Below, piece by piece: positions 2,033-26,683 of a stretch of DNA of 64,000 nt. Location of the stretch: contig NW_026782140.1 of the NCBI RefSeq assembly GCF_031769215.1, positions 682,001-746,000 of the forward strand, given 5' to 3'. The notes under the pieces were generated by a model that worked only from the letters and a program-made list of their open reading frames with translations, was not told where the DNA came from and did no database searches. How positions within the stretch are numbered: position 1 is the stretch's first letter; each line of letters opens with the position of its first letter. Position numbers and translations under genes: made by a program. Source of the stretch: Ylistrum balloti. Taxonomy: Eukaryota.

Positions 2033-2127
2033 AGGTACTTTTTTCTGTGTGACAACAACAGCACTATCTTTACCACGCACTGCTACAGATGTGAGCCCAC
2101 CTTGGTTGATAGCTTTAAATGCATATT
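2033..2127 (-). CDS. PSMA6: Proteasome subunit alpha type-6, coding exon 2 (gene continues beyond the left edge)
   Basis: 95-nt exon, acceptor tttccacag, donor gtaagt. Encodes (E)[31 protein letters not shown] in phase with exon 1. No exon 3 (DKLLD...) is seen in 1-2030. Confidence 0.95.
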
Positions 2128-4435
2128 CTGTGGAAACAAATCAAAAACAAATATTGTGTCAGTGTAAGTTGATTAACCTATGTCAGATGATAAAATCTAA
2201 AATGATTTTTACCATGTATAGTATGACTAATGTACAATTCAATTTTGAACAGAAATAAATTAATTCACCTCAGTGGTTACAATACTGAAGTCCTGTGCCA
2301 CAGCTCCACTTTTACTGACACCACTAACATGAGTATTTGGTTTACGAATCAGTGAGAAGCAAGTAAAGTGTATAGCACAATTAACTGTTTTGATTTCTGT
2401 TCCATCACTTGACAATAAATTTCTTTAATATTTGCATGCACATATATATCATAGCATATCCAATCAGAAATCTTGTTTGCCCCTTAAAAATTTGCAGATA
2501 TCACAAAAACAATGAAAGCAATATAATACAGGGATATTTTTGTTTGAAATATTTCAATAATTCAAAGAAAGTTTTTAGAAATTTTGAATGTTTAGACACT
2601 TTTATACTAAACAAACTTATAGAACAAATGAGCGACGTTAAGTTTTGTTTCGAATGTTACATTAACCTGAGTTAGATTCTCTGTCAATAATAAAAGTGTC
2701 CGAGCAAATAGCTCTTTAAAAGACTTGGATATGACACATTAAAGAATTGTCTCTCTTCCCATATGTGTTACCTTAGAAAATGATATGGTCCATATAGTTG
2801 GAATTTTGGTTTACCATTGGCCATGGAAGGTTTCTGCCAAGTCTCATTGAAATGTTACATATATTATACAAATAACATTGTTTTTGTTTGTACAGCCTTT
2901 GAAATACACATTACCATTATGCCTACCTGCCAATGTTTCAAAATTCTCATTGGGGAGAAAAGTGTGTGATTAAGTGCATGCTTTACTATACTATAACATT
3001 GAAAAAAATATCTGATTTTTTTCAACAAGTTTAAATTCTCAGTATTCATTCATTCACATTATATAACGGATAGTAAGATTATCTGTTTTTAATCTTTGTC
3101 AAACTTTTGATGTGGAATAGAATAACATTGGAATTTTTGTATAAGGCAAATGACATGTAAATATGCGAAAAGATCATTTTAACATGTCGTTCGTTTTGTT
3201 GCTCTGGTTTATAAAATGACTGAAACAATTGTCTGTTCCATGATGGAAAATATCAGGTCGTCGAACTGAGTTATTGTATCACCCTGTTATAGAGGTGACT
3301 GTTTTAGTTATCATATTTGTCTTTTATTCGTGTTCATTCGTGCAAGCGTCAGTTACTTTTGTGTCCATTTGCGTAAGCATCAGTTACTTTCGTTTTGTCA
3401 AATGTATATATCTAGTAGGCCTGGGATAGGCATACTATTGCTGGTTCCATGTGAACTGAGACATGCGCTGTTTAATTCTATCTTCCTTTTCCTGCTTAAC
3501 CTTTTTTTAATTATTTCTGATTTTGGGCTCAAACTGGAAAGACATATTTTGTCATCTACCATTACTTTGATGTTGGTCGTGCCATACACAGGGTAAGTCT
3601 TGCATTTAAAATGGAAACAGTTTATGTCTGTACAAATTATTCATAACAATCCTTTATTTATCTATTTCAAAGCAGCAATTCAATTATGTTAGATTAATCT
3701 ATATTTTCACCTGATTGATCAGGATGTGTGCAATATCTTTTTAGAGTATGATATGTAATCCACTATTTCAATTTAGGTCTGTGTTTAGGTCATTTATGTC
3801 CAATGTAAATTAAAGTAGTGTTTGGCATATTTGTAATAAACTACATTGTTCAGTTTTGTAATACAGAGTAAATATGTCAGTAACGCGAATGTCACTGTGT
3901 GTTGTGTGTAAGTGTGTTTGCTTTGGGTTGCGCTCTATGACGAGTTTTCCGTGTAATGTAATATATTATTTGTATTGTTTTAGGGATTTCTAAAGCTATG
4001 CATGTACTGTGAATAAAACAAATATGGAACGAGATCGCCTGGTTCGGTTGGTTGTTGAAGAAAACTCTAAAACCCAACTGTGCTACATTATATTGAGTAT
4101 GTAAAATGTCGAATGGATAAAAATAAAACTGAGTTAAAACTTAAAAAAAAAAAAAAGTATACAGAAAGGCAATGATCATTAAGAAGCTAAATATGAACGA
4201 TTTCATTATCATAACACCAACAACGTCAACTTTGATTTTGTTCACATCTACATGCAATACTTACTTCACTATGCAGAGATCACTAGGCACGAGGCTGATT
4301 TAAGAAATTTGATGGACATGATGAATGCAAGTTTTAACAACTGAGAGGGGGGGTTGCTAATAATCATCGGTTGTTTCAATAAAATGGAACCAAACACCGT
4401 TAGGCGCTTGTATCAAATTTGCAAACTGTCCTTAC

Positions 4436-4511
4436 CAACTTGATAAAGTCTTCCTTCTGGAGAAAATATAGTAATGTGTCTATCAAAACCAGCACTACTA
4501 CCCCGCGACAT
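4436..4511 (-). CDS. PSMA6: Proteasome subunit alpha type-6, coding exon 1
   Basis: ATG at 4511 gives [25 protein letters not shown](E), the PSMA6 N-terminus as I recall it. 76 nt, followed by donor gtaagg. Not in the ORF track. Confidence 0.96.
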
Positions 4512-4519
4512 CTCGTGTG

Positions 4520-4995
4520 TTGTTTGTGTGATGTCGAACCGGTGATTTTGCTAAATTTGATAATGCTAGCTTTACATGCAGCGCAATGATACAAAAAATA
4601 ATGTATTTTTGTTTTCCTACCACTAAAGAAACTCACAAAACTTATATTGAACACATTTCAAATACATTATTATACACGAAAATTTAATAATTAAGTGAAT
4701 TCCCTGGATTTCAAAAAGAAAAAGCATGTTACATGCTGACGGTCTATATTTTATAGTGTATATGTTTCCGAAAATGCGCAAGCTAGCTACAGCCGCAGTT
4801 TCGAACCGGAAGTTGTCAGGCAACTCGCATCAACCTATCAATCACAGTTCGTAGGCATAGCCATCAATCTGTCGTGTAAGGAGAATCATTACACAGGTAT
4901 GTCATGTCAACAACAGTATGTCCACGTGTTTTTGATTGGACGTATTATTTTCTTCCATATGGTTGATATATTTTTTCATATTCAAGCATTTTCAG
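4520..4995. promoter_or_regulatory. Bidirectional promoter region of PSMA6 and SLC35B2
   Basis: CpG-richer stretch between the head-to-head genes. ETS motif ACCGGAAGT at 4805-4813, TGCGCA at 4775-4780, GATTGG near 4934, ARE-like GTGATTTTGC at 4542-4551. Candidate plus-strand 5'UTR donor cag|gtatgt at 4897. Confidence 0.6.
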
Positions 4996-24213: not shown

Positions 24214-24707
24214 GAACTTGTATTCTATTGATATTATCAACCAGAAAAAAACAATTCTGTAAGGAGATCACACTACCATAGAATAAGTACAGTTTTATTT
24301 ACCATTGAGTTCAGTATTAAGATGAGAAAAGATTCCATAATAATATTATGTGTATTATGTTGAGTTGATAGTATGGAGCAAAATGAACTTATGATGATAG
24401 AATGACAATGATCCTTAGTGTATCTAGAAGAAAATTTATAATCATCATTGAATATAAAATGTTTTCTATAAATATCAACTTACTCTTGCAAATCTCCAAT
24501 ATGAGATGAAAACCCAGACCTGTGGAAAACATTGTGAATTGATAATTAATACATCCTAATTAGTATAGAGTGATATATACACTTGTACAGTTTCCAGTTT
24601 GAGGACAATCTAGTATATCATATACATCCGTGCTGCACATAGCAAGTGTTAGTGTTAGAATAGCTTTTTTCCCATTTAACAGCTGAGCTATACAGTACTC
24701 TAGAGTT

Positions 24708-25474
24708 ACAAGAGGCCCAGAGGGCCTGTATCACTTGCCCTGGACATTAAGTCAATAATGCAAAACTTTACATTTCTTTAGAAGGAAAACATTTCCCCTG
24801 ATGAGCCTCACCCCACAGATACAGCTTTAAATTCCCTAGTGGTGGGGACAAAGATCAGTTGTTAATCTCTTGATGTCCAGCAATGCTATTAAATTAAGGA
24901 ATGGTAATATCAATGGCTTCAAAGATATAATCTGTCCTGGGGTGGGACCAAACCCCAGGATAATTAATCAGTTATGATTGTGTTTATCTCCTGATGCTCA
25001 GCACTGTTATAGTTATTCAGTGAAGATCACAAGAAGCAAAGATCCAAATGAATTATTGATGGTGCAAAGCAATTATATGAAAATGAGCTAAATCTACTTG
25101 AGGGTTAGAGTTTCCCTGTTTGGTCCCGCCCATCTGGCCCCAGGGAGCCGAAACCCATGCTTTACACAAAATTGATTTCACTTCACCCAAGCATGCTTCA
25201 GACCAATTTTTGACAATATCCTGCAATTCCTAAAGAACAAGAAAGATTGTAAAGAACTGATAGGCCCCAAAGGTGGTGGGGGCAGACCCACCAATTACAC
25301 AAAATTTATTGCCTTTCCCCAAGGATGCTTCAGACCAAATTTTATTAAAATCCACTCAGTTGTTCATGAATGGTTGCAATATATAGGAAAAGTTGCCAGA
25401 CGATGGATGTTTGATGACAGATGACACAGTATCCCTTAAACTCATTTGGCCCTTCGGTCCAGGTGAGGAAAAAA
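24708..25474. mobile_element. Non-autonomous Helentron/HINE-like element
   Basis: Ends are acaagaggcccagagggcct (hairpin) and ctcatttggcccttcggtccaggtgag-aaaa (hairpin). The same end types occur in reverse orientation at 34514 (ttttagctcacc...gtgagct) and 38590 (ggccattaggcctcttgtt). Family call is inference from known bivalve repeats. Confidence 0.5.
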
Positions 25475-25784
25475 TGATAGCTTGAATGAACCTATATGAA
25501 CTTCCATAAAATTCATCTTCATCATCACAACAGATTCTTCTCATTGCATTGAAAATCTGACTACGAGACAGCACAGATTACATTGATTACATCTACACCC
25601 TTTGGCCTTTTCAGTACAAGTGTATGCTACACACTATTTAATAATTTCAGTTCAACAAGATGCAAACTAGGAAAGCATTGATACACCACATTACTACATA
25701 AAGGCCCCCTTTAATCAAGTCTCTTGGCAAGTGAACTCAGCATGACTTGTGTAATCAAAGGAAGTTAGAGAAAAAGATACAAAC

Positions 25785-26683
25785 CTTTCTAGTTGTGTAA
25801 GAATTGACGCAATATTTTCTTCTTTCACAAAAAACTGGTACTTTTTCATTAAGAAGAACAAGTTTTCAAAGGTGAAATGCTCCACACCTCTTTCAACAGC
25901 TGACAAATATCCCTCCACAAATACATTCAAAGACAATGGCAAGTTCTGTGATGTGGGTTGAAACTGTTGTAACTTCACTAGATTGTCCATCTTAACTATA
26001 ATGTCACAGAATGTGTGAAAGTCTCCTGCACGGGCTGTGGCAGCAAGGATATAGTCAAAACCACTCTGAATACTCGGCTTTATTATTAGACATAAATCCA
26101 ACAACTTGAAACACTCTCTCCACCTACTGGTGAAAGATAGTATCTGGATTACTGTCAGTAAAGTTTCAAAATCAAATACTCCATCTGAGATTTCACACAT
26201 ACGATCATATGTAGAAAACACTAGATCCTCACACTGAAGAGTGGCAAAGATATGCAAAAGAAGCACCAGTTCAGGGATATCAAACTGTGCTCTATCAAGA
26301 TCCTGCAAAATTTGTTCTACTGTCTCAAAGGATTGCCTTGTTTTCTGAACCATTTGCAATGTAATGTATGGGAAAATTTCTTCGTTGAATAGATTTTCTC
26401 TCTGTAAAGCAGATCTTAAAACATTGACATCCAAGGACTGCTCTGTACTCACTAGTTCTTCAGTGAGACGCTTCATACGATTTACAGCCCCTGGTTTGAA
26501 AGTAGGATCTCCAAAGTTTGATTTTTCTACACCAAACAATGTGCGTTTGAATTGTAGAGAATGTGTTTGACATGTGCATGTTAATGGCTTTACGATTCTT
26601 CTGTCCAGCAACAAACAGCCATGTCTGTATGTACAAAGCTGAATCAGGCCAGATGGCCGGTACCTAATTATCTTAGAAAACAT
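25785..26683 (-). CDS. PRORP: PRORP coding exon 1 (transit peptide plus PPR-like helical region)
   Basis: First ATG at 26683 after an in-frame upstream stop (MFSKIIRYRPSG..., Arg/Ser/Leu-rich presequence-like). Upstream acceptor tttgtttcag at 26814, donor ag|gtttgt at 25784. The six exons total 1629 nt, or 542 aa plus stop. Confidence 0.88.

What the first reader, a model, noticed from the sequence alone, without database searches (positions are those of the whole stretch)
2033..26683. PSMA6-SLC35B2-PRORP block looks like the intact ancestor of two human IkappaB neighbourhoods and predicts an IkappaB gene just left of the window
Seen: order and strands are PSMA6(-), SLC35B2(+), PRORP(-). Established: on human 14q13 the order is PRORP(+), PSMA6(+), NFKBIA(-), with an annotated PRORP-PSMA6 readthrough. 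On human 6p21 SLC35B2 lies directly downstream of NFKBIE on the same strand. Flipping both into this window's orientation gives IkB(+), PSMA6(-), PRORP(-) and IkB(+), SLC35B2(+). Inference: these superimpose on one ancestral block IkB(+)-PSMA6(-)-SLC35B2(+)-PRORP(-), split by reciprocal gene loss after vertebrate genome duplication. That would be a bilaterian-age microsynteny linking an NF-kB inhibitor to a proteasome subunit.
Basis: partly seen in the sequence, partly recalled or inferred. Interest (0 to 1): 0.72.

Follow-up and report, generated by a model that had tools for sequence, protein, structure and literature searches.

The report
Mollusc PSMA6-SLC35B2-PRORP block, no IkB neighbour
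Three housekeeping genes (PSMA6, SLC35B2, PRORP) sit side by side in this scallop genome exactly as described and in the same arrangement in other molluscs, but the predicted NF-kB inhibitor gene is not next to them, so an ancient IkB-proteasome linkage is not supported.

Summary
PSMA6(-), SLC35B2(+) and PRORP(-) lie in that order. Only PSMA6 coding exons 1-2 are in the window; exons 3-7 run 6.6 kb further left.

The block is old. A limpet has the same trio on the same strands. An oyster and a chiton have the head-to-head PSMA6|SLC35B2 pair. The annelid Capitella does not.

The prediction fails.
- The gene left of PSMA6 is a TPR gene (TTC27-like by recollection), not an ankyrin gene.
- An ankyrin model that detects fish NFKBIE exons finds nothing in 284 kb (213 kb left of the PSMA6 3' end, plus the window).
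- The two scallop IkB genes lie on other contigs (C54, C42).
- In four other molluscs the IkB homologue listed lies on a different chromosome from SLC35B2; five fish controls share one.
- A brittle-star IkB gene has none of the three genes within 10 kb.

IkB therefore looks like a later addition on the vertebrate side.

Published trout data place nfkbia-psma6-hsp90b and nfkbie-slc35b2 on the same chromosomes, with nearly consecutive gene ids. Local IkB duplication then looks likelier than reciprocal loss after genome duplication.

This is an ordinary conserved microsynteny, probably held by a shared bidirectional promoter. Interest is modest.

The parts
4437..4511 (-). PSMA6 coding exon 1 (start codon at 4511)
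   Evidence: Six-frame read. It is 92-100% identical to exon 1 of the 246-aa proteasome alpha gene beside SLC35B2 in limpet and oyster, and 84% to chiton.
2033..2128 (-). PSMA6 coding exon 2. Exons 3-7 lie left of the window, at C283:675431-681928.
   Evidence: It is 86-95% identical to limpet, oyster and chiton exon 2. Exon 5, outside the window, matches PDB PSMA6 at 3.7e-24.
3750..5250 (.). The only CpG-rich zone between PSMA6 and SLC35B2: candidate shared bidirectional promoter
   Evidence: CpG observed/expected is 0.7-1.1 here and 0-0.4 from 5.5 kb through the SLC35B2 coding exons. Inferred, not shown by RNA.
6702..8119 (.). 43-bp minisatellite, 33 copies, in the PSMA6-SLC35B2 interval (probably the SLC35B2 first intron)
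   Evidence: Tandem Repeats Finder.
10456..10680 (+). SLC35B2 (PAPS transporter 1) coding exon 1
   Evidence: tblastn of the scallop proteins P0001 and P0002; a GT donor follows at about 10680.
11231..12349 (+). SLC35B2 coding exon 2, with the stop codon
   Evidence: Pfam UAA 2.8e-49. 93% identity to the Argopecten irradians transporter. Single copy.
20652..20822 (-). PRORP exon, metallonuclease domain
   Evidence: PF16953 positions 139-196, 30 bits. Pfam 2.8e-6. tblastx match to the limpet PRORP gene.
22850..23059 (-). PRORP exon, start of the PRORP domain
   Evidence: PF16953 positions 6-77, 34.5 bits. tblastx match to limpet PRORP.
25715..26683 (-). PRORP first coding exon (N-terminal part; a PPR region is expected there from knowledge of PRORP)
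   Evidence: A 330-aa open frame, upstream of and on the same strand as the PF16953 exons. It has no Pfam or PDB match of its own, so its assignment is by position.
30545..32608 (+). Right-hand neighbour of PRORP: intronless 687-aa BTB-BACK protein (not an IkB)
   Evidence: Pfam BTB 6.7e-24 and a weak BACK match.
48340..49008 (+). DAN-domain (gremlin/cerberus-type) ORF further right (context only)
   Evidence: Pfam DAN 3e-34.

Best explanation
PSMA6(-), SLC35B2(+) and PRORP(-) form an old conserved microsyntenic block. It is ancestral at least to molluscs. Because same-strand PRORP-PSMA6 adjacency is shared with vertebrates, it probably dates to the bilaterian ancestor.

The core is a head-to-head pair of housekeeping genes, PSMA6|SLC35B2, that most likely share one bidirectional, unmethylated promoter. 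That would make breaks between them costly. PRORP lies tail to tail with SLC35B2.

An IkB gene is not part of this block in molluscs. IkB became a neighbour later, on the lineage leading to jawed vertebrates.

On the vertebrate side, the two IkB genes (alpha and epsilon) probably arose by local duplication around the PSMA6/SLC35B2/HSP90AB1 region. A later break would then have separated the 14q13-type and 6p21.1-type halves.

Shown: the gene identities, the order and strands, the recurrence in three other molluscs, the absence of any ankyrin gene nearby, and the location of the scallop IkB genes elsewhere.

Inferred: the shared promoter, the bilaterian age, and the local-duplication scenario.
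For: Gene identities and order.

Conservation in molluscs:
- Limpet L040 carries a 246-aa proteasome alpha gene (-), SLC35B2 (+) and a 541-aa PRORP gene (-), with exon-by-exon matches.
- Oyster L037 and chiton L054 carry PSMA6(-)|SLC35B2(+) with annotated gene ends 650-690 bp apart. All seven scallop PSMA6 exons match the chiton gene.

Shared promoter: a single CpG-rich zone lies at window 3.75-5.25 kb, and the rest of the interval is CpG-depleted.

No IkB nearby:
- An ankyrin HMM built from 62 repeats of this genome gives a best E of 0.56 over 11,843 ORFs of C283:462001-746000.
- The same HMM finds gar NFKBIE exons at 2e-9, 6e-8 and 0.015 and Betta nfkbie at 1e-11.
- The left neighbour is a TPR gene on the minus strand.
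- The right neighbours are BTB-BACK and DAN genes.

Scallop IkB genes lie elsewhere:
- They are at C54:368.2-369.1 kb and C42:214.6-215.0 kb, and nothing matches on C283.
- IkB identity rests on colinear PDB matches to IkB-alpha (1NFI, 1IKN) and Bcl-3, and on homologues named NF-kappa-B inhibitor epsilon, alpha or cactus.

Chromosome-length fingerprints: the IkB homologue and SLC35B2 are on different chromosomes in Dreissena, Mactra, Mya and Babylonia, and on the same one in 5 of 5 fish controls.

Vertebrate side:
- Gar has IkB(+)-slc35b2(+).
- Betta has TMEM151(-), IkB(+), slc35b2(+), HSP90(-).
- In trout, nfkbia-a lies beside hsp90b and psma6. nfkbie lies beside tmem151b and slc35b2, on the same chromosomes. 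The gene ids are LOC110522049 and LOC110522047 (PMC10299181).
Against: - The annelid Capitella has no PSMA6 or PRORP within 10 kb of SLC35B2, annotated or by tblastn. The block is therefore not universal in spiralians.
- No amphioxus, hemichordate, sea urchin, arthropod or cnidarian locus of these three genes could be examined. The bilaterian age rests on molluscs plus vertebrates only.
- PRORP was not within 10 kb of SLC35B2 in oyster or chiton. The full trio is shown only in scallop and limpet.
- No RNA data were available, so the shared promoter is not demonstrated. In scallop the two start codons are 5.9 kb apart.
- The assembly is at contig level. IkB could still lie on the same chromosome as C283.
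- Molluscs have several IkB paralogues, and only one per species entered the chromosome comparison.
- The trout contiguity is read from text and gene-id numbering, not from coordinates.
Confidence: 0.6

Rival explanations
1. The bilaterian ancestor had IkB(+)-PSMA6(-)-SLC35B2(+)-PRORP(-). Molluscs later lost IkB from the block or moved it away. Vertebrates split the block by reciprocal gene loss after two rounds of genome duplication.
For: Flipping the two vertebrate neighbourhoods does superimpose them on the mollusc trio:
- PRORP-PSMA6 are adjacent in human (PMC6105103).
- PSMA6 and NFKBIA share a locus (PMC3892944).
- HSP90AB1, SLC35B2 and NFKBIE share a locus (PMC5069896).
- IkB(+)-slc35b2(+) is confirmed in gar and Betta.
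Against: - No ankyrin gene lies within 213 kb left of the PSMA6 3' end or within 37 kb right of PRORP.
- No IkB-like exon matches anywhere on the 1.79 Mb contig.
- The sequenced part of the limpet, oyster and chiton loci holds no ankyrin ORF.
- IkB is on another chromosome in 4 of 4 molluscs compared.
- The brittle-star IkB gene lacks these neighbours.
- In trout both IkB neighbourhoods lie on one chromosome. Ohnologues left by reciprocal loss would not be expected to do so.
Confidence: 0.12
2. Convergence or chance. The trio is a mollusc-specific arrangement, and the PRORP-PSMA6 adjacency of vertebrates arose independently.
For: Capitella lacks the arrangement. No non-mollusc invertebrate with the block was found here.
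Against: - The same gene pair on the same relative strands in two phyla is very unlikely by chance among roughly 20,000 genes.
- A second coincidence would also be needed: psma6 lies close to slc35b2, with hsp90b alongside, in salmonids.
- The KIAA0391-PSMA6 cluster has already been described as evolutionarily conserved (PMC3892944).
Confidence: 0.15
3. Passive retention. The block persists only because mollusc and vertebrate genomes rearrange slowly, with no functional constraint such as a shared promoter.
For: No conserved non-coding sequence was seen between the scallop, limpet and oyster intergenic regions. PRORP is not within 10 kb in oyster or chiton.
Against: The PSMA6|SLC35B2 head-to-head pair survives in four mollusc lineages of three classes (bivalves, gastropods, chitons), while the flanking genes seen differ between scallop and the vertebrate loci. 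TMEM151 and the HSP90 genes lie on other scallop contigs. One CpG-rich zone serves the interval.
Confidence: 0.13

Closest known systems
Conserved metazoan microsyntenic blocks and bidirectional-promoter gene pairs (as catalogued by Irimia et al. 2012 and Simakov et al. 2013; cited from my own knowledge)
   Same: Unrelated housekeeping genes are kept adjacent, on the same strands, across phyla. The core pair is head to head with a single CpG-rich zone between the two genes.
   Different: I found no paper that lists this particular trio. The shared promoter is inferred here, not measured.
Human 14q13.2 cluster PPP2R3C-PRORP(KIAA0391)-PSMA6-NFKBIA
   Same: PRORP lies directly upstream of PSMA6 on the same strand, as in the scallop once SLC35B2 is removed (PMC6105103 and PMC3892944).
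   Different: In molluscs SLC35B2 sits between the two genes. The gene beyond the PSMA6 3' end is a TPR gene, not NFKBIA. The gene beyond the PRORP 5' end is a BTB gene, not PPP2R3C.
Vertebrate 6p21.1-type cluster TMEM151B-NFKBIE-SLC35B2-HSP90AB1
   Same: SLC35B2 is the shared member. The cluster is confirmed here in Betta and partly in gar and reported for human (PMC5069896).
   Different: In the scallop, TMEM151 is on contig C99, the HSP90 genes are on C303, C443 and C159, and the IkB genes are on C54 and C42. None is on C283.

Membership tests
PSMA6 (20S proteasome subunit alpha type-6) | Best match to PSMA6 rather than to other alpha subunit types, with the N-terminal alpha signature | tested here: met
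   Exon 5 matches PDB PSMA6 chains at 3.7e-24. Yeast alpha-1 (Scl1, the PSMA6 orthologue by my knowledge) comes next at about 6e-12, and other alpha types start at 2e-8. Exons 1-2 carry the alpha N-terminal motif. PF00227 matches two exons.
SLC35B2 (PAPS transporter 1) | UAA-family nucleotide-sugar transporter that is orthologous to named PAPST1 proteins | tested here: met
   PF08449 at 2.8e-49. The top hits are all named adenosine 3'-phospho 5'-phosphosulfate transporter 1, in molluscs and fish. Single copy.
PRORP (protein-only RNase P) | PRORP metallonuclease domain (PF16953), preceded by a PPR region | tested here: inconclusive
   Two exons match PF16953 at 34.5 and 30 bits. Each is below the 39.1-bit cut-off; together they exceed it. 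They match the annotated limpet PRORP gene. The N-terminal exon has no Pfam or PDB match.
Bilaterian conserved microsyntenic block | Same genes, order and strands in at least two phyla | tested here: inconclusive
   The full trio is in scallop and limpet, and the pair is in oyster and chiton, all one phylum. Only PRORP-PSMA6 adjacency (human, from the literature) and psma6-slc35b2 proximity (trout, from the literature) extend it to vertebrates. It is absent in Capitella.
Bidirectional-promoter gene pair | Divergent TSSs less than about 1 kb apart that share one promoter | not testable with these tools
   Head-to-head orientation is shown. Annotated gene ends are 650-690 bp apart in oyster and chiton. 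There is one CpG-rich zone in the scallop. No RNA run was available to map TSSs.
   There is no ankyrin signal in C283:462001-746000, with positive controls. The IkB genes are on C54 and C42.
IkB family (for the genes at C54 and C42) | Six ankyrin repeats with the IkB-type insert between repeats 3 and 4, an N-terminal DSGxxS degron and an acidic C-terminal tail | tested here: inconclusive
   The ankyrin exons match IkB-alpha (1NFI, 1IKN) and Bcl-3 colinearly, and an acidic tail is present. Homologues are named NF-kappa-B inhibitor.

The most novel reading that the evidence does not exclude
PSMA6-SLC35B2-PRORP is a bilaterian-age block. A single IkB gene inserted into it on the vertebrate stem and duplicated in place. 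IkB-alpha and IkB-epsilon would then be local duplicates flanking PSMA6/SLC35B2/HSP90AB1 rather than genome-duplication ohnologues. The human 14q13 and 6p21.1 loci would be the two halves of one locus, broken later.
Probability: 0.35. Interest if true: 0.45.

Novelty: new member of a known kind. Interest (0 to 1): 0.3.

Why it matters
A bilaterian-age linkage between an NF-kB inhibitor and a subunit of the proteasome that degrades it would have been a striking case of functional gene clustering. The evidence here removes that reading for molluscs.

What remains is a clean example of a housekeeping gene block conserved across molluscs and partly shared with vertebrates. It is a useful synteny anchor.

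It also yields a concrete, cheaply testable question about how vertebrate IkB-alpha and IkB-epsilon arose: local duplication in one locus, or genome duplication.

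Tried and rejected
- Four of the twelve contig look-ups were lost on 'isoform X2' proteins that are not on record: Argopecten, Patella vulgata, Octopus and Lineus/Lingula. As a result no nemertean, brachiopod or cephalopod locus was seen.
- The whole-genome Ank_2 search scored only 150 of 1038 candidates, so on its own it could not exclude C283. I replaced it with an ankyrin HMM of my own, with positive controls.
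- A homologue search with the scallop IkB exon was cut off by the length rule and returned no named IkB. A 303-aa hit from that search served as the next query.
- PDB ranking of the IkB exon is dominated by designed and multi-repeat ankyrin proteins. Only the colinear single-stretch matches are informative.
- The PRORP N-terminal exon has no PDB match.
- The protein atlas gave only a generic TPR label for one exon of the left neighbour and nothing for another. The name 'TTC27-like' therefore rests on my recollection of human TTC27.
- There are no RNA runs for this organism.
- Searches of earlier findings returned nothing.
- Paper searches for microsynteny involving these genes returned nothing relevant. 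The trout paper's supplement has no coordinates.
Full-length PSMA6 or PRORP searches and look-ups centred on PSMA6, which would have shown what lies beyond its 3' end in limpet, oyster and chiton, were therefore left out.

Full report
Where the window lies. The window is G000:C283:682001-746000 in a 648.5 Mb assembly of 1372 contigs. The nearest proteins are from scallops: 93% identity to Argopecten irradians and 89% to Mizuhopecten yessoensis for the SLC35B2 open frame. The genome is therefore that of a pectinid bivalve.

The observation. SLC35B2 has two coding exons on the plus strand, at about 10456-10680 and 11231-12349. Pfam UAA scores 2.8e-49. tblastn with the scallop proteins places the exons. 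Every top hit is named adenosine 3'-phospho 5'-phosphosulfate transporter 1, and the gene is single copy.

PRORP lies on the minus strand. Its first coding exon is at 25715-26683. Two exons match PF16953, at 22850-23059 (positions 6-77, 34.5 bits) and 20652-20822 (positions 139-196, 30 bits). These are the only good matches in the genome.

PSMA6 lies on the minus strand, but only its first two coding exons are in the window, at 4437-4511 and 2033-2128. The other five lie to the left, at C283:681743-681928, 679670-679846, 676366-676635, 676039-676167 and 675431-675514. Exon 5 matches PDB proteasome alpha type-6 at 3.7e-24, well ahead of the other named subunit types.

The PSMA6 3' end, beyond which IkB was predicted, is 6.6 kb left of the window.

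Exons were searched one by one. Full-length PSMA6 and PRORP searches were therefore left out.

What lies around the block. The next gene left of PSMA6 is also on the minus strand. It runs from about C283:668.7 kb down past 652 kb and is a TPR-repeat gene (open frames; weak Pfam TPR; TPR clusters). Several of its exons resemble human TTC27 as I remember it, and that name rests on recollection only. Between it and PSMA6 there is only a minisatellite. Further left, near 616 kb, is an exon of a sterol-sensing-domain type transporter. Right of PRORP come a 27-bp minisatellite, an intronless 687-aa BTB-BACK open frame at 30545-32608, and a DAN-domain open frame at 48340-49008. None of these is an ankyrin protein.

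Testing the prediction. Two motif scans for ankyrin repeats found nothing in open frames of 30 codons or more. I then built an ankyrin-repeat HMM from 62 repeats taken from six ankyrin genes of this same genome. I ran it on all 11,843 open frames of at least 15 codons in C283:462001-746000. The best hit had E 0.56, and the weak hits were scattered.

With the same database size, the HMM finds three clustered exons of gar NFKBIE at 2e-9, 6e-8 and 0.015. It finds Betta nfkbie at 1.4e-11, 6e-9 and 0.003. It is therefore sensitive to IkB-type repeats.

Whole-genome searches with two gar NFKBIE exons, and with the scallop's own IkB exon, scored all their candidates and gave no match on C283.

These searches found two IkB-family genes elsewhere. 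One is at C54:368.2-369.1 kb on the minus strand and matches both gar exons in the right order. The other is at C42:214.6-215.0 kb on the plus strand, in a single 377-codon open frame, and is 58% identical to the first. All other ankyrin matches are weaker than 2e-4.

The C54 exons carry the IkB-type insert between repeats and an acidic tail. They align colinearly with IkB-alpha (1NFI, 1IKN) and Bcl-3. A 303-aa relative retrieves proteins named NF-kappa-B inhibitor epsilon, alpha, cactus or IkB.

The prediction of an IkB gene just left of the window is refuted.

Other species. Look-ups of SLC35B2 orthologues, each with 10 kb of flank, gave the following.
- The limpet Patella caerulea has a 246-aa proteasome alpha gene (-), SLC35B2 (+) and a 541-aa PRORP gene (-). 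That is the same trio on the same strands, with exon-level matches to all three scallop genes.
- The oyster Ostrea edulis and the chiton Liolophura sinensis have PSMA6(-)|SLC35B2(+) head to head, with annotated ends about 650-690 bp apart. All seven scallop PSMA6 exons match the chiton gene at 67-95% identity.
- The annelid Capitella teleta has no PSMA6 or PRORP within 10 kb, annotated or by tblastn.

No ankyrin open frame occurs in the limpet, oyster or chiton loci.

The contig length printed for each protein can serve as a chromosome fingerprint. By that measure the IkB homologue and SLC35B2 lie on different chromosomes in Dreissena, Mactra, Mya and Babylonia. In all five fish where both are listed (Carassius, Cyprinus, Mugil, Arapaima, Myxocyprinus) they share one. 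Only one IkB paralogue per mollusc entered this comparison.

A brittle-star IkB gene (Amphiura filiformis) has only an LRR gene within 10 kb and no PSMA6, SLC35B2 or PRORP.

In the scallop, the other vertebrate neighbours are also elsewhere. TMEM151 is on C99 and the HSP90 genes are on C303, C443 and C159.

The vertebrate side.
- Gar has an ankyrin gene (+) 7 kb upstream of slc35b2 (+).
- Betta has TMEM151(-), IkB(+), slc35b2(+), HSP90(-). This is the human 6p21.1 order reported in PMC5069896.
- Human KIAA0391/PRORP and PSMA6 are adjacent (coordinates in PMC6105103). They have been called an evolutionarily conserved cluster, with NFKBIA in the same locus (PMC3892944).

The trout IkB paper (PMC10299181) adds three things. 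nfkbia-a1 and -a2 lie beside hsp90b and psma6. nfkbie-a1 and -a2 lie beside tmem151b and slc35b2, 'on the same chromosomes'. The gene ids are nearly consecutive: LOC110522047 and LOC110522049 in trout, and LOC112217444 and LOC112217446 in Chinook salmon.

Betta places hsp90ab1 directly beside slc35b2. Taken together, the two 'IkB neighbourhoods' seem to be one contiguous region in teleosts. That is hard to reconcile with ohnologues separated by reciprocal loss. It fits better with a local duplication of IkB around PSMA6/SLC35B2/HSP90AB1 and a later break in the lineage leading to mammals. This step is an inference from text and gene-id numbering. I could not see the coordinates.

How the block probably works. 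Between the PSMA6 and SLC35B2 start codons (5.9 kb in the scallop) there is one CpG-rich zone, at 3.75-5.25 kb around PSMA6 exon 1. Its CpG observed/expected ratio is 0.7-1.1. Everything from 5.5 kb through the SLC35B2 coding exons is strongly CpG-depleted, at 0-0.4.

In molluscs, CpG depletion marks methylated gene bodies of housekeeping genes (established knowledge). The pattern suggests that SLC35B2 transcription starts next to the PSMA6 start, with a long first intron that holds a 43-bp minisatellite. This agrees with the 650-690 bp spacing annotated in oyster and chiton.

A shared bidirectional promoter is the most likely reason the pair has stayed together. No RNA run was available to test this.

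Verdict. The trio is a real and old conserved block: mollusc-wide for the core pair, and probably bilaterian through PRORP-PSMA6. The IkB part of the idea is not supported outside vertebrates, and the duplication-and-loss mechanism is doubtful. This is a new example of a well-known kind of feature. I found no paper that lists it. Interest is modest.

Noticed in passing
window 553-735: A dispersed repeat of about 175 bp, possibly a SINE. At least 40 copies at 89-93% identity are spread over many contigs.
   Followed up: no
window 27442-28894; also 6702-8119, 16907-17303, 22194-2578+20000 (i.e. 22194-22578), 23926-24215: Long minisatellite arrays: a 27-bp unit in 54 copies, a 43-bp unit in 33 copies, and others. 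They create long false open frames in all six frames. Similar arrays fill much of the left flank, for example C283:670.3-671.6 kb.
   Followed up: partly
window 30545-32608 (+): An intronless 687-aa BTB-BACK open frame with a very acidic C-terminal tail. It lies head to head with PRORP, about 3.9 kb away.
   Followed up: partly
window 48340-49008 (+): A DAN-domain ORF (gremlin/cerberus-type BMP antagonist; Pfam 3e-34) in a GC-richer stretch of the window (40-54 kb).
   Followed up: partly
G000:C54:368.2-369.1 kb (L042:1453-2341, -) and G000:C42:214638-215027 (+): The scallop has two IkB-family paralogues that are 58% identical. The C42 copy lies in a single 377-codon open frame and may be intronless. 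The C54 copy is split by at least one intron.
   Followed up: partly
C283:616.4-617.0 kb (L015:4428-5012, +): An exon of a sterol-sensing-domain/RND-like membrane protein (weak Pfam MMPL match), about 60 kb left of PSMA6.
   Followed up: no
L039 (Capitella teleta KB305378.1:336124-357427): In Capitella, SLC35B2 is called as a gene of only about 1.3 kb for a 402-aa product, so it has little or no intron. It is followed by SAYSvFN-domain and FERM genes, a different neighbourhood from the molluscs.
   Followed up: no
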